From NCBI GenBank assembly GCA_965603825.1, contig CBFDEM010000057.1, positions 558,001 to 622,000 of the forward strand: 64,000 bases of DNA, read 5' to 3'. The notes beneath the pieces were generated by a model that made no database searches, was not told where the DNA came from, and saw nothing but the letters and a program-made list of their open reading frames with translations. Positions 2,981-64,000 of this stretch are shown one piece after another. Position 1 is the stretch's first letter; each line of letters starts with the position of its first letter. Source of the DNA: Blepharisma stoltei ATCC 30299 (lineage: Eukaryota; Protista; Ciliophora). The position numbers and the translations under genes are program-made.

Positions 2981-3178
2981 TGGGTCGTGCGATTTCTCCA
3001 ACGTAATGCCTACAGTAACTACAGCAACTACAGTTACTTCCACAATTCCAACAACTCAAACAATTCCAAAAACTCTAAGCAATTCCAATAACTCCAAACA
3101 ATTCCAACTTCTAGATCAACAGATCCAGCTTCAACTGCCACATCAAGCTCAGTAGCAACTCAGCAATAAATTAGTTCT

Positions 3179-3520
3179 TTATTCTTGACCTTTACCTTTC
3201 TCGACAAGTCATTTATCTACATCGTTTCCAGTATTATCTAAACTTTCTTTTTCACATTCTGCATCTTCTTCTTCAACTTCGACTCCTAATTCCTCCTCAA
3301 ATTCATAATCTTGTCTATCTTCATAATTCAGTGACCACTCCGTGACATCATCATCCAATCCACACATGACAACAGTTCCAACATCTAGGAGCAGGCTAAA
3401 TGCAAGATCAGCATCTCCTCCACATGCTTCCAGCATTCTCATAGCAATTTCCAAGTCAAAACCTAGTAATTTCAGCAACAAAACATACTTTTTTTGATAC
3501 CCCAAGAGTTCATTCGTCAT
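3179..3520 (-). CDS. Small UBA-domain protein with acidic tail (about 113 aa)
   Basis: LLKLLGFDLEIAMRMLEACGGDADLAFSLLL matches the UBA pattern (L..MGF....A..AL....GD...A...LL). Reading through TGA at 3209 gives TAA at 3179-3181. Confidence 0.55.
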
Positions 3521-54562: not shown

Positions 54563-55564
54563 ATGGAAAATAGCTTTGGCTCAGATTTAGAGCAGTATTT
54601 GAGAGACTATTCGGCTTCAAAGGTTTATAAAGCAGCAAGAAATTTGCAGCTCCCGCTAAGCGAAAATACTAGAAAACAAAACCAGCTTGGCCTAATAGAA
54701 AAGAATGAATTATTAGAAATTGAAAACAAGAAATTGACTATTAAAATAAGAGAATTAGAGCATAAATGGTCAGAAGAGAGAAAAGAATTAATTGATTCTC
54801 ACCTTTATAAAATCGAAGAAATTGAAAATAAAAATAGTCAGCTTAGAAAAACCATCACAAATTTGGAAATTGAATTGAAAAATGCACAAAATGAATTAAA
54901 TTCATACCAATGCAAGCATGAATATCTTGAACTAAAAGCGAAATCGTTAAGAAATTTTCAGGAAAACCGCTCAGAGCTGCTAAAAGAAGTAGAAAAGTTA
55001 ACTGATAAACTTTTCAAATTCAAACAGAAAAAATATGAACAATTTAATGAAATGAGCCTAAAATATAAAGCCATTGAAGATGAATTAGAAATCTGTAAGG
55101 AAGAGAAGAGAGAAGCAGATAAAAAAATTTCGATGTTAGAGCAGACACTGAGACATATGTGTGAAGAAAAAGATATGAGGATAGAAAGATTACAGTTTCT
55201 TATTAGAGAAAAAACTCCTCTAAAACCAAAAGAAAACTTATCAAGGACAGTCACTCCGCTGACTGACAGAAACACAAGGTCAATTTCTCCTATGGCAACA
55301 TCGAGAAGCACTTTTGATTTAACAAAAACAATGGAAACAACTGCAACTACGAAACTCTCTGAAGACTTCAGTGCTGACATCAAAAATCTTGAAAAATCCC
55401 ACAAGAAATTAAAGCAAAAATATATTTCTCTGATAACCTCGAGAGCTCATGAGTCAGAGCTCATAAAAGCATATAACAAAATTAATATCAATGAAAAAGC
55501 ATTGAGTGATTTTCAAAAAAAGCAGAAAAAAATAGTCTTAGAATCAAAAAGCTTTAATTTGTAA
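54563..55564 (+). CDS. Coiled-coil protein of unknown function (333 aa)
   Basis: Uninterrupted E/K/L heptad-rich ORF with an S/T/P-rich linker. Confidence 0.75.
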   Translation: MENSFGSDLEQYLRDYSASKVYKAARNLQLPLSENTRKQNQLGLIEKNELLEIENKKLTIKIRELEHKWSEERKELIDSHLYKIEEIENKNSQLRKTITNLEIELKNAQNELNSYQCKHEYLELKAKSLRNFQENRSELLKEVEKLTDKLFKFKQKKYEQFNEMSLKYKAIEDELEICKEEKREADKKISMLEQTLRHMCEEKDMRIERLQFLIREKTPLKPKENLSRTVTPLTDRNTRSISPMATSRSTFDLTKTMETTATTKLSEDFSADIKNLEKSHKKLKQKYISLITSRAHESELIKAYNKININEKALSDFQKKQKKIVLESKSFNL

Positions 55565-55584
55565 AAATAAATTTTAATAAAGGT

Positions 55585-58500
55585 TTAAAGCTCATTTACT
55601 GTCATAACTGCTAGCGAATCATTAATTCTTGGACCAATTTCTTGAATTTTGCTTCCTAAATCTCCAACGTTTCTTGCTTTTCCAAGCACCCCTCCAGAGC
55701 CCATAGGCAGTAATGAGTTTACAGCTGATCCAAACTTGCTTGCTGTTATAAACCCTATAATTCCAAGGAAAATAAATGCGAAAATCAAAATCAATATCAG
55801 CAGAGTAATTAAAAACATTTTTATCAGTTTTCCTTTTCCCATTCCCATATGCTCAATCGCACCATTTGCTATTTCACTGCGAATATATTCCAGAGCCGCA
55901 TCAAATTCTTGCACATTCATGCAACCACTTCCATCTGCATCAAACTTTGAAAAAATTTCCAATAGCCTTTGCATGGTAAATTCCAAGTCAAAAAATTTCA
56001 TAATTTGGGCAAACTCTTCAAAATCAAGCTCTCCTGAATGGTCTTTGTCCAGCATATGGAAGATTTGGTCTGTATCTCCTCCTGAATCCATTTTTTCTTT
56101 TAATTTTTCAAGATCACTTTTGCCAGACCTAGCTTCTTCTTCAGATTCTCCTATTAATTTCAGTCTTTTAATAAGTGTTACGACTTGCTGAATTTTAACA
56201 GGGTCAAATTCACAAAATCTCCCAGCCATGCCAGCTAGGCCATTCCAGTCTCCTTTTCCAAGTGCTATAAACCCAGCTATGATATTTTCATCAATTTCAT
56301 ATGTTTTTGACAGTTTATAAGCAGCTTTATCTCTGCTTTCTAAGCTATTATCTGACTGGAATAGAGCTACAAGTCCACATAACAAAGATAAAGTTTCAGG
56401 CTTCACATTTGGCATTAAAGCAAGCCCTAAGCTAGGCATTGCAGCTAAGACTGCACTTTTATACTTATTTGGATCTGTGCATACCAAAAAGAATGCATCC
56501 AGAACAATAATATCAGCATTTTCCTTTTCTTTGCCAGGTTTTACAGGCAATCTTAAGTTTTTCGGGATATTTGATACAATATAGTCTACAAATGGAAATA
56601 GGACTTCTCCCATGCCGTCACGACCATAGTCTAGATCTTTTTGCAGTTTTCCTAGTAGTTTTACTATAGAATCAACAACTGGGATTGGAATTTTTGGGTA
56701 GCGCTGATTAATTATCCTAGGAAGCCATGTAAATTCTTTCAAGTTTAATGGATTCTTAGGGACTGCTAATGTAAAAAGCTCTTTCAGTGCGTCTTCTGGG
56801 ATGCCAAACTCCTCTTTAGCGAACCCTAAAAATGCTTCAAGCTCCCCCATTGCATAAAGCAAAAACATTTTCCCTGGCTTAGACTTAGCTGGCATTTCAA
56901 CCTTTGTAAGCTTTTCTAAAAATTTCTTTATAAATGGTAAAAGTTCTCTATAGCGGTCATCAAGCTTTTTTTGGACCAAAGCTATCATTATTTCAGGAGC
57001 GTTTTCTACATAATTTTCTTTTAGTTCCATTTTATAATAATCTGAGTTCGCAGCCCTTGTTACCCCTTTTGCCATTAAATTATACTGTTTCCTTACAGAT
57101 CCTACAAGGCTTTGTATAAGTCCTGAGGGTATATTTAAATTATTGTGGTCAATATATTCCTCAACTTTATCAGTAGCATTAAAAAGCATGGTAGAATTTC
57201 CATTGAAAATGTGGACTAAGTACTTTAAAATTTCATAGTGGTCAAAGCTTTCTCCAAGGATTCTCATGACGATTGGGACAACTTCTACGTCTCCTTCACC
57301 AATCCCTAGAATTAAATCAAGAATGATCCCTCCCGCCTTTTTCTTGTACTCATTTAAGAGAATTCGCCTCATATTAGGATTTCTTCAGAGTCTCTTGAAG
57401 CCGATTTTTTCAATAAGTGCTTCTTTGTAAGGGTTTCCGATTGAATTTGTATTAGAAGCTTCAATGTCGTTTGTCATGTCTGCTTCTAAAAATCTGGTGT
57501 GATTAGGTGAAGTTTCGATTTCTAGATCAATATCCATACGAATGTTGTCGTTAAACATGTTTTCTTTAACATCATATGGCATTTTCTTAGATAAAATGCT
57601 TTGCAAAGCTTTTAATAGTAGTGCTTGTTGTGACTCATCTTTTTCTTGCAATCTCTGCAAATTCATAAAAAAGAGCCCTAATTGTACCCATGCATCCAGA
57701 TCTCCTGACATAGCTTGAAATATTGAAGCAGCTAAAGCGGAACTAATGGGTGGTGACGAAAGCCTTTCACAAATGCTCTGAAACGAAAGCTCCAAGCTTT
57801 CTTTAGTTTTATAACAATATGGCAAAAACCCTTGTGCAATACTTGGATCAATTTCAAGCCTAACTGCTAATGGGCCAATTCCTGATGAAAGAGCATCAAT
57901 TGAGTTAAAAGAAAGCATGATCAGGATAAGCAGCATATCTTGGTCTACTTCTAAAAAATCTCCTAAAGCATCAATTGTTTCTATAACTCCATGTGGATTT
58001 CGAGAACATAGCGCTGTCAAGCTCTGCAGAAGCCTTGGGTCATGATATATCTTTGTACACAACAATTGATTGGTTTTACTTTCAATTTTCCAACAACTAT
58101 GATCGCCTTTAGCCAATTTTACCAAAAATTCGAGCTCGGGAGCATCAGGCTCAAAGCCATAAAATGAAAATAAATCGTCTTCGTTTGCTTCATCAGTATC
58201 AGTGTTCCCCAACAATTTTTTATTTTTTTCTTCCAATTCTTTAAATTCTTCTACTAGCTCTAATATATCTTCCCAATCTCCAGTAGACAGTGCCATTATT
58301 TCTTTTAATGTATCAATATCAATAGGTAAATCTTCATATAAAGATTTCAATATTTCTTCAATTTTATCATGATGATGCAAATTCCCACCTGCTAGTTCCA
58401 AAAACAGCTTTACAGACTCTTCGTTGAAATATCCTTCACCTGGTAATGATTTTTCATTTAATCCAGCTATAAGAGTATTCATATATTTCTGTTTTCTACT

Positions 58501-61500
58501 TGGGTCAAAACTTAAAGTTATTCGCTTTTTCAGTATTGAGCCTTCAGAATCGACCTCATCTAGGTCGCCAGTTGACGAAAAAGAGCTTTCAGATGAAGAA
58601 CCCATTGATGAAGACTCTGAGTCAGATTTGTCAGATTCTTCGGTTTCCAAAATGTAGTCGTTAAAATCGTCATCATGGACGTATTCGTCAATGAACCGTT
58701 GAGCTTCTCTTGCAGTTTCTATTTGTAAAATTTGTCGAAGCCATAATAAGCATGCTGCATCATGCCTGGCTAGTTTTATTAAAATTTCTAATCCTTTTGA
58801 AGGTATTTTAAACAAATCAGATAAGTTTCTTACAATAGAAGGAAGGTGCTTAAATGCCATCCATGCATTATGTTCTTTGGATTTTATATTGCTTCTAAAA
58901 GGGTTCTGATTTACTAAACATGCAAAACTTGCATAAATATTTTTTTCAACTGATCCCCAGCCCAGCTTCCCTGCGATTTCTCCTATAATGCTGGCATCAC
59001 CTTGCACAAGTTTTGTGACTACAACAGCACCATTGCTATTAGGCAATCCAATAGATTTGCAAAGCCAAGGAAGCCCTTGTTTTAGCTTTCTCGTTTTTTG
59101 AGAAGGCTTATATTTTTTGCCAGACTTGCCATCAATAGATAAATATGAGTAAATGCTAAGCAAAGCTTTTAAGAGCTGCGGCCTTATTGCTCCGCCATCT
59201 TCTAAATCTTCAGCTATGTCTTCAACATGGTCAAAATCAGATCTAGTCAGTGCAACAACAGCGGCTGCTTTTTGGTCATCAAGGCCCAATTTTAACACAA
59301 TTTTTTGGAAACTTGAAGAAGTTTTTAGCGTAGTATGGTTTAAATCGTCATTTCCTGACAAAGTCACCAAGACCTCTGCTATATCTGCATCAAAGGAAAT
59401 AGCTGAGCAAATGTCTTCTATATTTTGGACTTGTCCAAGCGCCATAGAAATGAAGCCTCGACAATGAGATTCTTCTATTTGAAATCCTGGACTGTGCAGT
59501 CTAGACATTTCGATAATGGTGGAGGCCATAGTTTCATAATCAAGCTTAGAAGCTGCAATCATCCCTGATATAACCAATGGAGGGATTTCTAAGACTTGTC
59601 CTAGGACTTCTGAACAAGTAGCTTTTTTCGATAATTCGCCTTGAGGGTTTATAGAAAATTTACAATTAGTTTTGATTGCTAAAGCTGATATGGATTTTCC
59701 TATGTTTTCAAGAATTGGGTCAAGCCTTAGCACGTGAAGCAAATTACCCACTTTTTCTATGACATCTGAGTCAGAAAGAGCTCCAAAAATGGTCATAATT
59801 GTTGTGAGAGTGTCAGGGTTTAAAGAAAGTGCTTTTCCTAATGGTTCTAGCTCAGAGATTTCTCCATTTACAAAGTTCGCTATTGAGTCTTGCAAAGCTG
59901 GGGCATCAACCCCGAGTTCTCCTATAAATTTCTTAGTGAACTGTTTAAATATTTCAGCGTTTTCAGAAACAATGTCAGCAAATCCAATAGCGAGGGAGTC
60001 TAAAAAGGAGGTTGGGACTCCTATAGTTCTAGCCAGCTTATTGAAGCCAAGAACAGCATTGAAAAATATCTGGTTTTGGTTCGAATAGTCTTGAATTATT
60101 CCTTCATAGCCAGACACATCTTTTATGCCCACTTTTTCAAGCCAGTTCTTCATAGCGATAGTTTTTGGATAGATATTGTCTTCTAAAACCATATCAATTC
60201 AGGCGCTCATCATTTCTGGCTCAACTTCAAACAGTCTTGCAAGGGCAATTATATTTTCTTTTCTTTTAGTTCCTTGAGTTTGCCATAGATATGAGGCTTG
60301 GATTAATGATTTATATTTTCTTTGGTTTTCTTCATCACATGGGACTTTCTTTTCAAAGATTTTTCTAAGGAAGATGGCCGGATATTGGAATGACATCAAT
60401 AGCTGCCCTTTTGCCATAATTCTTCTCTTCACTTTCAAAGCTTTTATTTCTGAAACCTTATTCGCAAGTGCTTTGCACCAATCCTTACAAAGCGCTGCAT
60501 GAAATCTTCATGACAGCGCTTTTTTCCTCCTTACAAGTGGATCATCATTTTTTAGTTTCAGCTGTTTTACTAAATATCCATTTGGCAAATCTTTCGGGTC
60601 AATAAGCCTTTTTGCTACAAACGTCAGGTCTTTGCATTGCATTTTCAGCTTAGAATGAGCTTCCCTAATAGAATCTACATCAAGTGAAGTCAGCCACACA
60701 GTCACATGTGATAAATAATCAGTAAAGCTTTCATCCAATCTCATTCTCCTTACAACTTCTCTTGTGATTTCTTTAAGTGCTGAGCCTTGCCGCTTATTAG
60801 CCCCTCTTATAATTGAATAAAGTCCTAAGAGCTGTTCCCCAGTCAATTTAAAAAATTTTGCCATCCATTCCATGCTTTCAGCTGTTGGCTGATGTGACTC
60901 TGCAAGTGCTTTAAATGCAGGCGGCAGCTTATTTTCATTAATCATAGCTTGGATTTCACTGTCAGGCTGTATGATGTCTCCACTAATTAAATTTGAGTCT
61001 CTTACGTTCTCAACATTTGTAGTCAGCCGAGGGATTTCTGTATATTTTTTCTCTGCAAAAATAGGAGCTATGCTTTTGACGATTTCTGGGTCTAAGTCAT
61101 ATTGATCAGCTAGCTCATCAAAATCAATGTTAACGCCGTGGATTATTGCAAATAGAGAAGAAATTGTTTGATGCTCAAGTCTCCAGCCATATTTTCTGTT
61201 AAGCATGTCCGTAACTTGTATTAGAAGGCGTTGAAGCTGTCCATGAGATTCTCTAGCCATATGGACGATCATTTGGATCGGCAGGGAGTCTTGGATTCCT
61301 AAAAATTTAGAAAATGTGTCGACTTTTTCATCCCAGCCGCTATAGTCATTTTGAAATTTACTTGCATATCCTTCATCACAAAAAGCTCCAATACATTCCG
61401 CTATATCTTTAGGGAAGTTCCCAAAATTGGTCATTAGCCTTACAAAAATTTCCACAATTTCTTTGCCGCCATCTTCAATTAATCCTTTAATAAGAAGCAT

Positions 61501-64000
61501 TAAATCTGTAATAGGCTTAGGGAACGTCTCTGATGTAGATATTCAGGTCAGCATTCTCTCAGTAGATCCACGTGACATTGCAACAAGTGCTTCAATAATT
61601 CTAGGATCTATATTGTATCCATCAATTTCTTTGTCAGCTAATAATTCTTTTTTCATCTTCACAAATTGCACAGTTGCCATTTTCACAGAACTTCTTATAT
61701 TTAAATCACTTTGTTTTAGTGATACTTTTACTATCATTTTTGCAATATCAGGAGATATATTAATGGCTGGGATTGCAGCAAGCTGTTCAGTGATTCCTAA
61801 AAGCTTATTATTATCTTTTTGTATTACTGCCACGATAGCTGCCATTATCAAAGGATGAATTCCAAACTCGATTGCAATTTCTTTTATGGCAGATTCATCG
61901 CCTTGAGCTAAAGCAGTTGCGAGCTTATGGTTTATATCTAGCGATTTCGCTATTCCTCCAAGCGGAGTTTTAGAAAATACTTGTAAGGTTCTGTTTTCTC
62001 TACTAATTGTAGAAGTCTGTACTTGGCTTAAAGCTAGCCCAGCACATGCACTTTCTAATGTTGCACTCACATTCCCATTGAGTTTTTCTTTTACAGAGGT
62101 TTTTACCCTCTTGAAAATTTCTGAAGTCATAAAAGTGATTATTTTTACCTGGGCCAAGCAAAATGCTATTAACGTTGCAGCACCTGCACAGTAAGGCAAA
62201 AATATATCAGGGTTAAGCACTGCTCCTAATATAAACCACATTAATGCATTCACAAATAGCATCACAATAATTCCAGCAATAAATAATAACGCGAAATAAT
62301 GGGCAAATTGAGAAAGTTTTCTATATCCTGTAATCCCTGCTAGCAAGGTGTCTGCCCTGGCTGGGAAAACTTGATAGATGTAATATGTGTAAAGCTCAAC
62401 AATAGAAATTACTAATAAAATAGCCGACACTATTAGCATCACCCAAAGAATTGTTTCTAAGTATTCAAATTTTGACGGCATCAAATACCATGCACTTTTC
62501 ATATCAATTTTGGTCAGAATATAGTCAGGATTTCTTGCAGAAGTTTCAGCATGCTTTGTTTCTGTTAAAAGCGGAGTTAAAGATAGCGGCAATACTATCC
62601 ACACACACAAAATCACATGCAGAATGGCTACGCAGCAATCTGCACAATACCAACATTTCCCTAGAGGGCTAACATCTTTATCGCCTTCTTTATATACAAA
62701 TGCTGATAAATCTATCCTATATCGTCCTCCAGCTTTTAAATGGGTTATTTGTAGCCTCTCAAAAATACTCCCCATAGCGCCCATCGCTCTTTTAGTAATA
62801 GGAACAGCATCAGTCACCTGCTCAGCCCTGCAAAACTTCTCATACTCGCTTTGGAAATCTTTAACATAAATTACATCAGCATTAAATGGAGATAAATTGC
62901 ACCTCGACCTGACGAAAAAGCTTAAAGAGTCTTCATTTGGCATTTGTGCAGGCTTTCCAAGCTCAATTAATTCTTTTCTATTTTTAAAAAAGATTTTTCT
63001 GAAAACTTCAGTAGAGGTATCGTTGACAGTAAAAAATTCCATCTCAAGATCAGTGAATTTCTCTTTATTTTCTTTAAGATTTTTTTCGACATATCCTTTT
63101 GCAAAGCAGAATTCTTCATACTTTGACTTTACATCTACCAATTTTAATGTTTGTATCGGCACTTCTTCGCCTTCTGGTACTTCTTTTACAACTTTTTGTA
63201 AAAACAAAGACAATGAGTCTGCGTTTGATTGAGAACTTTGAGTTATTAGAATATCAGGAATTGCATAAGGAGGCAATAAGCAGCCCTCCCCAGGGACTTG
63301 GTCTTCCTCTTCTTTTCCTTCATTTCCTTCAACTTCTTCTTTTTCATTTTCGTTATTTTCGTTATTTTCATCATTTTCTTCATCATCTTCATCTAATTCG
63401 TTTAAAATTTCTTTGGCAGATCTATTATCTCTTATTCTTGTTTCCACTGTATTTCTGAGCACTAAAAACCTTCTTTTATGCTCTAATTTTCTCCATACAA
63501 TATCAGCGAGATTTTTTAGAAAAATGTAAAAGCCAAAAGCACCGCCAAGCCCACACACAAAGCCGAGAAACAAACTAATAGAAAGAGCAGCTAATAAAAA
63601 TGGGTTATCAGTGAGCTTAATAAGGTGTTTTGACAGCTGTAGGGTTTTTGTCCGAGAAAATTTGTATCAGTTGTCACTTGTTTTGCTTGTTTCCATTCAT
63701 ATGAGGAGGTCAGAATCTCTTGCTGACCACATGTCATAGAGTGTGTTATACATAGTGCTGATTGTGGAGTTGGTTAATTTTGTATTGGTTAAAGGGTAGC
63801 TTAAAGGAAGAATCCTTATGTTAATAGAATATATATCAGGGACTAGTAGTCCAAAAGATATTAATGACAGCCACCAAGGCTTCATTTGAGCATATGCCTC
63901 ATTTGTAGTAAAAAGCCATTTTCCATTATCTTCATAGATCCCAGGCATGTTCATAATTGCTAGCACGTCTTTGTTGATCCCTGCGTTAAATGTATCATTT
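55585..64000 (-). CDS. Giant (>2800 aa, 5'-partial) multi-pass membrane protein with helical repeats and a C-terminal EF-hand pair
   Basis: Six ORF pieces in one minus frame, separated only by TGA, ending at TAA 55585-55587. EF-hands DKDHSGELDFEE and DADGSGCMNVQE. TM segments at about 63480-63600, 62140-62660 and 55700-55820. Confidence 0.8.

What the first reader, a model, noticed from the sequence alone, without database searches (positions are those of the whole stretch)
55585..64000. Unassigned giant membrane protein hidden by TGA codons: TMs, paired winged-helix-like modules, long solenoid, EF-hands, TM tail
Seen: one reading frame of at least 2805 codons once TGA is read as Trp; the standard code splits it into six ORFs. 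Order from the N-terminus: luminal-looking region, TM, acidic linker, two internal repeats, about 4 TMs, about 1900 aa of helical repeats, two canonical EF-hands, then a terminal hydrophobic hairpin. I recognise no named family with this architecture. Inference: a Ca2+-regulated membrane scaffold, tether or channel-like protein. It is the best candidate for an undescribed system in this window.
Basis: partly seen in the sequence, partly recalled or inferred. Interest (0 to 1): 0.8.

Follow-up and report, generated by a model that had tools for sequence, protein, structure and literature searches.

The report
Giant conserved EF-hand membrane protein gene
This is one real, intron-free gene of the ciliate Blepharisma stoltei (where TGA means tryptophan) for a 3,173-residue, seven-pass membrane protein. 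It belongs to an unnamed, functionally unstudied family found in ciliates, choanoflagellates and other protists, so the genetic-code 'disguise' is ordinary but the protein family is still unexplained.

Summary
On the minus strand, one frame runs from an ATG at 65104-65106 (1.1 kb beyond the window end) to a TAA at 55585-55587. It has 3,173 codons, no intron, and 8 in-frame TGAs, 6 of them inside the window.

The genome is Blepharisma stoltei (41 Mb, 64 contigs), whose published code reads UGA as Trp. The public protein set already holds this exact 3,173-aa product, unnamed. TGA positions align with Trp in homologues in 13 of 24 comparisons.

Modelled or scanned architecture:
- short cytosolic N-terminus and TM1;
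- an exoplasmic Toastrack-type beta-helix (AF2 pLDDT 92.6; VIA Z 12.4; Foldseek E 3e-6 to 4QRK) plus an alpha/beta subdomain;
- TM2 and an acidic linker;
- two tandem winged-helix modules of RFX / phage P4 origin-binding type (Z about 6, weak);
- a four-helix TM core carrying the family's most conserved motif (W..LGA..NP...LPYA);
- about 2,000 aa of helical repeats;
- an EF-hand pair, a conserved seventh TM and a short tail.

A profile search found 273 relatives. Named ones come from Protocruzia, Rhodelphis, two choanoflagellates and an ichthyosporean. Pfam has no model for the TM core or the solenoid.

Function is untested. I favour a Ca2+-responsive sub-membrane scaffold or sensor; a channel is the main rival. 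RNA evidence could not be obtained.

The parts
55585..64000 (-). In-window part of the single coding sequence. The whole CDS is 55585-65106: 3,173 codons plus TAA, with the ATG at 65104-65106 outside the window.
   Evidence: The translation is identical to database protein P0165. TM1 (aa 72-96) and the Toastrack beta-helix (aa 91-353) lie beyond the window end, at about 64048-64893.
63697..63699 (-). In-frame TGA (aa 470), read as Trp. The other in-window TGAs are at 63667-69 (aa 480), 61543-45 (aa 1188), 60508-10 (aa 1533), 60199-201 (aa 1636) and 57385-87 (aa 2574). Two more lie beyond the window (aa 253 and 264).
   Evidence: TGA positions align with W in 13 of 24 comparisons with three ciliate homologues, against a background W frequency of about 1.2%. 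In 9 of 16 TGA columns between the two paralogues, the partner is W or TGA.
63607..64000 (-). C-terminal alpha/beta subdomain of the exoplasmic domain (aa 370-500 lie in the window). It carries the conserved motif AY..(M)PWWL..S..LL.P.
   Evidence: AF2 model ma97ea6869ec8, pLDDT 92.6. Conservation in alignments A3 and A6. Conserved Cys residues and 6 N-x-S/T sequons in aa 97-500.
63520..63600 (-). TM2 (aa 503-529).
   Evidence: Hydropathy score 2.27. The flanking K/R bias puts the downstream side in the cytosol.
63307..63414 (-). Acidic D/E/N-rich linker (aa about 565-600).
   Evidence: Read directly from the sequence. Also acidic in the paralogue.
62986..63264 (-). Winged-helix-like module 1 (aa about 615-707).
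   Evidence: AF2 core model mcc28ebb5cff6, pLDDT 89.7. VIA-align matches: RFX5 Z 6.3, RFX1 DNA-binding domain Z 5.9, phage P4 origin-binding domain Z 5.7, Cdc6 winged helix Z 5.2. The ESM Atlas shape search returns D5 / Pox_D5 primase-helicases.
62713..62979 (-). Winged-helix-like module 2 (aa about 710-798), a tandem repeat of module 1.
   Evidence: The motif SL..F...(C)...D.I....F...Y..FC recurs in alignment A4. Pfam Pox_D5 appears only weakly, in 3 of 79 homologues.
62122..62652 (-). Four-helix transmembrane core (aa 819-995: TM3-TM6).
   Evidence: No known TM family matches at significance.
62173..62238 (-). Most conserved motif of the family, at the TM5/TM6 turn: W957..LGA..NP966...L970PY..GA.T.
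   Evidence: W, L, A, P and L are at least 90% conserved in 83 sequences. L960, P966 and L970 are invariant in the 12 full-length proteins.
56107..62121 (-). Cytosolic helical repeat region (aa 996-3000). At least 7 copies of a roughly 36-aa motif 'LGIdp..l..l..LA.GD...l..la' sit at aa 1051, 1942, 2018, 2096, 2258, 2316 and 2933.
   Evidence: Only aa 1036-1190 were modelled; they form helical hairpins with TPR-like VIA matches at Z 5-5.8. hhalign self-comparison: aa 1830-2099 resemble aa 1072-1350, probability 82%, E 1e-5. Motif HMM. No Pfam domain.
55903..56073 (-). EF-hand pair (aa 3012-3068). Loops DKDHSGELDFEE and DADGSGCMNVQE.
   Evidence: Pfam EF-hand_1 at E 7.6e-13 with two stretches; EF-hand_7 at E 9.8e-10. 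The first loop's D, D, E and F are invariant in 8 homologues from ciliates to a choanoflagellate.
55744..55824 (-). TM7 (aa 3095-3121), with conserved FAFIF.GI.GF.
   Evidence: Hydropathy score 3.34. F, F, G and F are invariant in alignment A5. A C-terminal TM at the same relative position occurs in most full-length homologues.
55588..55743 (-). Short exoplasmic tail (aa 3122-3173), beginning with the conserved FG(A/S)(A/V)VNS.LP.

Best explanation
SHOWN. This is one intron-free 9,522-nt macronuclear gene of Blepharisma stoltei, translated with UGA as Trp into a 3,173-aa protein. The protein belongs to an unnamed family conserved across distant protists.

Predicted layout, with the side of the membrane for each part:
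- N-terminus: cytosol.
- TM1.
- Toastrack-type beta-helix plus an alpha/beta subdomain: exoplasmic side. Evidence is the conserved Cys residues, the glycosylation sequons and the positive-inside rule.
- TM2.
- Acidic linker and two RFX / P4-origin-binding-type winged-helix modules: cytosol.
- Four-helix TM core.
- About 2,000-aa helical repeat region: cytosol.
- EF-hand pair: cytosol.
- TM7.
- About 50-aa exoplasmic tail.

INFERRED. The protein most likely acts as a Ca2+-responsive sub-membrane scaffold or transmembrane sensor.
- The beta-helix offers an outward docking surface.
- The giant solenoid is pinned to the membrane at both ends, by TM6 and TM7, and forms a cytosolic platform lying along the membrane.
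- The EF-hand pair sits about 25 residues before TM7, so Ca2+ binding could change how the solenoid end and TM7 sit against the TM core.

The gene identity and the architecture are near certain (about 0.97). The mechanism is a best guess.
For: Gene and code:
- define the ORF.
- Its translation is identical to database protein P0165.
- The paralogue P0164 is named as Blepharisma stoltei.
- PMC9942806 reports 41 Mbp, UGA=Trp and 15/16-nt introns.
- TGA aligns with W.

Family:
- 273 profile hits, 28 of them below 1e-30.
- Colinear full-length homologues at 46, 39 and 26% identity.
- Named members in Protocruzia, Rhodelphis, Bicosta, Salpingoeca and Chromosphaera.
- The same TM pattern across the family, and the same C-terminal EF-hand pair in 5 distant members.

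Folds:
- Exoplasmic domain model: pLDDT 92.6, pTM 0.88. It matches 4QRK and 4OPW (Foldseek E 3e-6, probability 1.0; VIA Z 10.6-12.4). These are the exemplar Toastrack structures named in PMC11237479.
- Core model: pLDDT 89.7, with winged-helix matches.

For a scaffold:
- About 2,000 aa of repeats with no catalytic domain.
- Homologues carry a U-box and a voltage-sensor-like TM half as insertions inside the solenoid. This suggests a membrane-apposed platform that takes accessory modules.
- PMC11237479 proposes that Toastrack sheets serve as protein-docking surfaces.
Against:
- The strongest conservation in the family lies inside the membrane, at the TM5/TM6 turn and TM7, not in the solenoid. 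That pattern suits a transport or channel function better than a passive scaffold.
- The winged-helix matches (Z 5.2-6.3) lie below the level at which the aligner's own notes say a match is safe.
- Toastrack membership rests on structure. The Pfam model does not hit this protein.
- The solenoid beyond aa 1190 was not folded.
- The topology is predicted, not measured.
Confidence: 0.5

Rival explanations
1. It is the pore-forming or transporting subunit of a giant Ca2+-modulated channel or transporter. The four-helix core and TM7 would oligomerise into a permeation path. The cytosolic solenoid with its EF-hands would act as the gating shell. This is analogous in logic, not in ancestry, to ryanodine and IP3 receptors.
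For: - The most conserved residues of the whole 3,173-aa protein sit in the membrane: W..LGA..NP...LPYA at the TM5/TM6 turn, and FAFIF.GI.GF plus FGAVVNS.LP at TM7.
- The two exoplasmic-face motifs resemble each other: [LF]GAV[LV]N[PS]..LP.
- The EF-hand pair directly precedes TM7.
- Relatives P0006 and P0007 carry a voltage-sensor-like half of Ion_trans.
- The weakest-of-weak profile matches to solved structures are all four-TM channels: pannexin-1 at E 0.06, nAChR, GLIC.
Against: - Those PDB matches are not significant.
- No structural match for the TM core rises above noise.
- No oligomer was modelled.
- No selectivity-filter-like or charged pore-lining motif was identified.
- Five TM helices per chain with a single conserved turn is not a recognised channel design.
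Confidence: 0.3
2. It is an inter-membrane tether. The N-terminal six TM helices sit in one membrane. The tail-anchor-like TM7 inserts post-translationally into another, for example the plasma membrane versus cortical alveoli or ER. The 2,000-aa solenoid would then span a contact site and respond to Ca2+.
For: - A single C-terminal TM about 50-100 aa from the end is conserved across the family.
- A very long solenoid lies between the two membrane-embedded parts.
- EF-hands sit next to the anchor.
Against: - TM7 and the segment after it are conserved residue by residue. That points to specific helix packing, probably with the core, rather than generic anchoring.
- The family occurs in lineages without alveoli.
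- There is no localisation evidence.
Confidence: 0.12
3. The winged-helix pair binds nucleic acid. The protein would be a membrane-tethered DNA- or RNA-binding factor or a relic of a D5/P4-type mobile-element protein.
For: - Fold resemblance to the RFX DNA-binding domain, the phage P4 origin-binding domain and the Cdc6 winged helix.
- The ESM Atlas neighbours are all D5-type primase-helicases.
- Weak Pox_D5 and Cdc6_C hits in 3 of 79 homologues each.
Against: - The modules sit between TM2 and TM3, so they cannot be released without two cleavages.
- No primase or helicase domain is present.
- Z scores are about 6 and TM-scores 0.14-0.31, which is weak.
- Winged helices often mediate protein contacts.
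Confidence: 0.05
4. The TGAs are true stops. The locus would then be several separate genes or a decayed pseudogene.
For: Under the standard code the frame is broken into pieces. No RNA evidence was obtained.
Against: - All 8 internal stops are TGA, none is TAA or TAG, and the frame ends in TAA.
- TGA aligns with Trp in homologues far above chance.
- Orthologue P0001 is an uninterrupted 3,180-aa ORF under the standard code.
- The published code of the species reads UGA as Trp.
Confidence: 0.01

Closest known systems
Bacterial Toastrack-domain proteins (Pfam DUF4097/DUF2154/DUF2807; LiaG, LiaF and PspC fusions; PDB 4QRK, 4OPW, 4YGU, 3LYC)
   Same: [quoted passage not shown] As in bacteria, the domain is joined to multi-TM regions and lies near winged-helix modules. 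Six of 44 family members reach the Pfam model weakly.
   Different: This is a eukaryotic protein of 3,173 aa. The domain is predicted to be exoplasmic, whereas PMC11237479 argues it is intracellular in bacteria. This protein does not hit the Pfam model. No PspA, PspC or LiaI-LiaF-TM partner was detected.
RFX DNA-binding domain / phage P4 alpha origin-binding domain / Pox_D5 C-terminal winged helix
   Same: Two tandem alpha/beta modules superpose on 1DP7 (74 of 76 residues, rmsd 2.6), 8ZJR_M and 1KA8 (78 of 100 residues, rmsd 3.0). The ESM Atlas shape neighbours are all D5-type primase-helicases.
   Different: Z is only 5.7-6.3. No primase or helicase is present. The modules are fixed between two TM segments on the cytosolic face. 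Sequence models do not hit this protein.
Ryanodine / IP3 receptors
   Same: Similar overall logic: a very large cytosolic alpha-solenoid, an EF-hand pair close to a C-terminal membrane segment, and a membrane-embedded conserved core.
   Different: No RIH, SPRY, MIR or six-TM Ion_trans domains. The TM helices are split into 2 + 4 + 1 along the chain. There is an exoplasmic beta-helix. No structural or sequence similarity was found.
Public annotation of this gene family in B. stoltei ('unnamed protein product' / UniRef 'EF-hand domain-containing protein')
   Same: Same gene model. P0165 equals the translation given here, and the paralogue P0164 carries these labels.
   Different: The annotation recognises only the EF-hands. 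The Toastrack domain, the winged-helix pair, the TM core motif, the repeat unit and the cross-eukaryote family are not recorded there.

Membership tests
EF-hand (Pfam PF00036 / PF13499) | Paired helix-loop-helix with a 12-residue Ca2+-binding loop (D-x-[DN]-x-[DNS]-...-E) scoring above the Pfam gathering threshold. | tested here: met
   EF-hand_1 scores 47.5 bits (cut-off 25.4) with two stretches. EF-hand_7 scores 39.1 bits (cut-off 30). The loops are DKDHSGELDFEE and DADGSGCMNVQE. The first loop is invariant at D, D and E in 8 homologues.
Toastrack (DUF4097/DUF2154/DUF2807) | [quoted passage not shown] | tested here: met
   AF2 model with pLDDT 92.6. Foldseek gives 4QRK E 3.4e-6 and 4OPW E 1.8e-4, probability 1.0. 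VIA gives 4YGU Z 12.4, 3LYC 11.3 and 4QRK 10.6, well above the unrelated beta-helices at Z 8 or below.
Toastrack (DUF4097/DUF2154/DUF2807) | Match to the Pfam sequence model PF13349 above its cut-off. | tested here: not met
   No hit for this protein and none anywhere in the genome at E <= 1. Only 6 of 44 homologous exoplasmic domains hit, best E 3e-4. P0006 scores 16.9 bits against a cut-off of 22.9.
RFX / P4-OBD / Pox_D5-type winged helix | Winged-helix fold superposing on RFX DNA-binding or P4 origin-binding domains with a clear margin over noise. | tested here: inconclusive
   Z is 5.7-6.3 with rmsd 2.6-3.0 over 74-79 residues. These rank first, but they are below the Z 8 caution level and level with unrelated helical rows. 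ESM Atlas TM-scores are 0.14-0.31. The modules were not folded on their own.
RFX / P4-OBD / Pox_D5-type winged helix | Match to Pfam Pox_D5 (PF03288) or RFX_DNA_binding. | tested here: not met
   No hit in this protein. Pox_D5 hits 3 of 79 homologues at best E 0.0039, and Cdc6_C hits 3 of 79.
Voltage-gated-like ion channels (Pfam Ion_trans) | Six-TM Ion_trans domain with a pore loop. | tested here: not met
   No hit in this protein. P0006 and P0007 have only the first half of the model (positions 1-123 of 241), as an insertion relative to this protein.
Ryanodine / IP3 receptor | RIH, RYDR_ITPR or MIR domains and a C-terminal six-TM channel. | tested here: not met
   No Pfam hit at E <= 0.1 on any piece. 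No Foldseek or VIA match.
DsbD / CcdA (the label IMG gives orthologue P0152) | DsbD-type six-TM domain with two conserved Cys residues; match to the Pfam DsbD models. | tested here: not met
   No Pfam hit and no NCBIfam hit apart from an EF-hand-type model below its cut-off. DsbD_2 hits only 2 of 83 TM cores, at E 3e-4. The label appears to be a TM-composition artefact.
LiaI-LiaF-TM (DUF2157) four-TM domain, the usual bacterial partner of Toastrack | Match to the DUF2157 / LiaF TM profile. | tested here: not met
   The family is not among the Pfam hits of 83 TM cores at E <= 0.05. A profile-profile comparison was not possible with these tools, so distant kinship is not excluded.

The most novel reading that the evidence does not exclude
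The family is a previously unrecognised, ancient eukaryotic class of giant Ca2+-gated membrane channel or mechano-/ligand-sensor. Its conserved TM5/TM6 turn and TM7 motifs would form the permeation or signalling site. It would have been assembled from a bacterial envelope-stress Toastrack module and a D5/RFX-type winged-helix pair, kept in free-living flagellated or ciliated protists, and lost from animals, fungi and plants.
Probability: 0.2. Interest if true: 0.8.

Novelty: categorically new. Interest (0 to 1): 0.55.

Why it matters
The genetic-code aspect is ordinary. What remains is a 3,000-5,700-residue membrane protein family conserved from ciliates to the closest unicellular relatives of animals. 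It has no Pfam model for its core, no solved relative and no described function.

Two features stand out. It joins a beta-helix otherwise typical of bacterial envelope-stress systems to a membrane-proximal winged-helix pair. It also places an EF-hand pair directly before a residue-by-residue conserved last TM helix.

If it proves to be a channel or a Ca2+-controlled cortical organiser, it would add a new component to protist excitability or membrane-cortex coupling. It would also be another gene that unicellular holozoans have and animals seem to lack. If it is 'only' a scaffold, it is still a well-defined, testable family for annotation, and the domain boundaries and motifs given here could seed a family model.

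I chose 'categorically new' for the protein family, not for the gene. The gene is already predicted in public data, and several of its individual domains are of known kinds.

Tried and rejected
- **Wrong frame.** The first translation was off by one base; corrected.
- **Word-index protein searches.** Piece A found nothing because of the tool's length window. The full-length orthologue P0001 found only the two Blepharisma proteins, P0001/P0163 and one weak metaclust protein. The 12-sequence full-length alignment found only the query.
- **ESM Atlas feature search.** No usable hit for the 937-aa solenoid piece or for the core.
- **PDB sequence searches.** No significant match for one solenoid piece, the core, the winged-helix profile or the TM profile. 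Pannexin, nAChR and GLIC at E 0.06-1 are treated as TM-composition noise.
- **Foldseek of the 595-residue core against PDB.** Nothing at E <= 0.001.
- **Self-BLAST for internal repeats.** Gave nothing. hhalign and a motif HMM did find repeats.
- **The search for related loci on genome and viral collections with A2.** Presence in prokaryotes or giant viruses is therefore untested.
- **Candidate tiny introns.** The only GTA...TAG candidate (16 nt, at aa 537) lies in a motif conserved in the paralogue and would shift the frame, so I rejected it.
- **A literature hit on a Paramecium mating substance with EF-hands (PMC10974281).** It is an unrelated 489-aa kinase.
- **The IMG label 'CcdA' on an orthologue.** Rejected.
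- **Search of earlier scan notes by words.** Nothing relevant.

Full report
**Organism and genetic code**

The window is C57:558001-622000 of a 41.46-Mb, 64-contig eukaryotic assembly. A search with a full-length orthologue returned the paralogue of the gene studied here as 'unnamed protein product [Blepharisma stoltei]', with the UniRef label 'EF-hand domain-containing protein'. It also returned the window's own product as database protein P0165.

The published B. stoltei macronuclear genome is 41 Mbp and 66% AT. It has predominantly 15/16-nt introns and reads UGA as tryptophan (PMC9942806). The window's G+C content of 27-37% fits this.

**The observation**

- On the minus strand, window:55585-63999 translates as one frame of 2,805 codons. 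It is broken only by six TGAs and ends in TAA.
- With the adjoining DNA (L009), the frame runs on to an ATG at 65104-65106, which has an in-frame TAA three codons upstream.
- The full ORF is 9,522 nt, or 3,173 codons. It has 8 TGA and 30 TGG codons and no internal TAA or TAG.
- The translation with TGA read as W is identical to P0165, so the public gene model is the same and has no intron.
- The only intron-like string, a 16-nt GTA...TAG at aa 537, lies in a motif conserved in the paralogue and would break the frame.

**Evidence that TGA is read through**

- A paralogue at C11:156211-165708 (3,165 aa, 10 TGAs) is colinear at 46% identity. In 9 of the 16 alignment columns holding a TGA in either copy, the partner is W or TGA.
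- Against three ciliate homologues, the eight TGA positions align with W in 13 of 24 comparisons. Ordinary TGG-encoded tryptophans do so in 57 of 90. The background W frequency is about 1.2%.
- Orthologue P0001 is an uninterrupted 3,180-aa ORF under the standard code, on a gene-dense contig.
- The reading 'several genes ending at TGA' is therefore effectively excluded.

**The family**

Pfam finds only the EF-hand pair in the five TGA-free pieces. NCBIfam finds only an EF-hand-type model, below its cut-off.

A profile of aa 481-1187 (alignment A1) searched against 1.84 billion representatives found 273 proteins at E <= 1e-3 and 28 at E <= 1e-30. Many are 1,700-5,800 aa long.

Members that carry taxon names:
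- Protocruzia adherens, a ciliate: 3,202 aa, 26% identity over the full length;
- Rhodelphis marinus;
- the choanoflagellates Bicosta minor and Salpingoeca infusionum;
- the ichthyosporean Chromosphaera perkinsii.

One environmental member lies on a contig with a calpain/C2/WW gene, which marks it as eukaryotic.

The TM pattern recurs across the family: one TM, about 430-670 aa, one TM, about 300 aa, a cluster of TMs, a long gap, then a last TM near the C-terminus. The EF-hand pair about 130-160 residues from the end is present in the Rhodelphis, Chromosphaera and Salpingoeca proteins and in P0019. A 12-protein full-length alignment is colinear, with conserved positions along the whole length.

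**Exoplasmic domain**

- A 44-sequence alignment (A3) gave an AF2 model of aa 66-532 with pLDDT 92.6 and pTM 0.88.
- Residues 91-353 form a beta-helix. It matches the 'putative adhesin' structures 4QRK, 3LJY, 4OPW, 3LYC, 4YGU and 3PET: Foldseek E down to 3.4e-6 with probability 1.0, and VIA Z 9.9-12.4. Generic beta-helices score Z 8 or less.
- 4QRK and 4OPW are the exemplars by which PMC11237479 defines the Toastrack domain. That domain unifies DUF4097, DUF2154 and DUF2807, and is described as pan-bacterial and sporadic in eukaryotes.
- At sequence level, PF13349 does not hit this protein or this genome. It weakly hits 6 of the 44 homologous domains and P0006.
- An alpha/beta subdomain follows, with the conserved motif AY..PWWL..S..LL.P.
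- Conserved cysteines, six N-x-S/T sequons and the K/R distribution around TM1 and TM2 place this domain on the exoplasmic side. PMC11237479 argues that bacterial Toastrack is intracellular, so this is a difference.

**Core**

A 130-sequence alignment (A2) gave a model of aa 596-1190 with pLDDT 89.7. It shows three parts.

- *Two tandem alpha/beta modules (aa about 615-707 and 710-798).* The best VIA matches are the RFX5 and RFX1 DNA-binding domains (Z 6.3 and 5.9), the phage P4 origin-binding domain (Z 5.7; 78 of 100 residues) and a Cdc6 winged helix (Z 5.2). The ESM Atlas shape search returned only D5 / P4-type primase-helicase clusters, at low TM-scores. Pfam Pox_D5 and Cdc6_C are the commonest weak hits among 79 homologous segments, three each. 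This agrees with an earlier first-stage note on the same window (s1-657805). The scores are modest, so I rate membership as inconclusive.
- *Four long TM helices.* The TM5/TM6 turn carries W957..LGA..NP966...L970PY..GA.T, the most conserved element of the family. No known TM family matches. Foldseek gave nothing, and VIA gave no row above helical noise. Profile-versus-PDB E-values are 0.06 or worse. The only recurrent Pfam hit is DsbD_2, in 2 of 83 cores, which probably explains the spurious IMG label 'CcdA' on an orthologue.
- *The first helical hairpins of the repeat region.*

**Solenoid**

- Only aa 1036-1190 were modelled. They form helical hairpins with TPR-like matches at Z 5-5.8.
- A profile self-comparison shows that aa 1830-2099 resemble aa 1072-1350 (probability 82%, E 1e-5). 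Weaker echoes occur elsewhere.
- A motif HMM finds seven copies of a roughly 36-residue unit, 'LGIdp..l..l..LA.GD...l..la'. The GD positions are conserved across the family.
- No Pfam domain occurs here in this protein or in 15 scanned homologues. The exceptions are a voltage-sensor-like half of Ion_trans in P0006 and P0007 and a U-box in P0006. Both are insertions relative to the Blepharisma protein.
- The helical nature of aa 1191-3000 is otherwise inferred from composition and repeats.

**C-terminus**

- Both EF-hand loops are canonical.
- The first loop is invariant at its D, D and E positions from ciliates to a choanoflagellate. The second has decayed in some lineages.
- TM7 (FAFIF.GI.GF) and the segment after it (FGAVVNS.LP) are conserved residue by residue. 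That is more than a plain anchor would need.
- The post-TM7 motif resembles the TM5/TM6 turn (LGAVLNP..(F)LP). Both would lie at the exoplasmic face.

**Mechanism**

Nothing here tests function. The shown facts are the architecture, the predicted topology, the canonical EF-hands and the conservation pattern.

- I favour (about 0.5) a Ca2+-responsive sub-membrane scaffold or transmembrane sensor. The solenoid would be pinned to the membrane at both ends, and the outward beta-helix would serve as a docking surface.
- The main rival (about 0.3) is a channel or transporter built from the TM core and TM7. The concentration of conservation inside the membrane favours this reading.
- A two-membrane tether (about 0.12), a nucleic-acid-binding role for the winged helices (about 0.05) and the separate-genes reading (about 0.01) follow.

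**Novelty and score**

- The code reassignment and the gene model are already public.
- The family has no Pfam model for its core, no solved relative and no literature that I could find.
- The domain combination is not described in the Toastrack survey.
- I therefore class the family as categorically new, although several of its individual domains are of known kinds.
- I score interest at 0.55. It is a solid, widely conserved, unexplained protein family, but it has no functional data and no direct bearing on a long-standing question.

Noticed in passing
G000:C11:156211-165708 (+) (L014/L015): A full-length paralogue of 3,165 aa with 10 in-frame TGAs, 46% identical and colinear. It equals database protein P0164, 'unnamed protein product [Blepharisma stoltei]'. 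The two copies are closer to each other than either is to orthologue P0001 (39-40%), so the duplication probably happened within the Blepharisma lineage.
   Followed up: partly
window 62173-62238 and 55714-55743 (minus strand; aa 957-978 and 3122-3131): The TM5/TM6 turn motif (LGAVLNP..FLP) and the conserved segment right after TM7 (FG(A/S)(A/V)VNS.LP) resemble each other. Both are predicted to lie at the exoplasmic face. They could be a duplicated element or two halves of one site. The significance of the resemblance was not assessed.
   Followed up: no
P0006 (aa 2046-2167 and 3148-3216) and P0007 (aa 2064-2208); locus L017: Environmental family members carry a voltage-sensor-like first half of Pfam Ion_trans, and P0006 also carries a U-box. 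Both are insertions inside the region that aligns with the Blepharisma solenoid.
   Followed up: partly
contig of P0010 in NCBI assembly GCA_041447075.1 (no DNA held): The 1,797-aa family member is followed 17 nt downstream, on the same strand, by a 4,627-aa ORF. The pair may be one protein of about 6,400 aa, split by a stop codon, a frameshift or a code difference.
   Followed up: no
G000, 12 places on 11 contigs (L001-L008 and others): Twelve or more full-length SSU rRNA genes, with near-identical scores, are scattered over many macronuclear contigs rather than sitting in one rDNA array.
   Followed up: no
window 54563-55587: The 3' end of this gene converges on the neighbouring plus-strand ORF 54563-55564 (333 aa, no Pfam hit). 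Only 20 nt separate the two stop codons, which leaves almost no room for 3' UTRs.
   Followed up: no
orthologue cluster P0001/P0151/P0152: JGI/IMG labels two members 'cytochrome c biogenesis protein CcdA'. No DsbD or CcdA model hits the Blepharisma protein, and DsbD_2 hits only 2 of 83 homologous TM cores weakly. The label appears to be an annotation artefact.
   Followed up: yes
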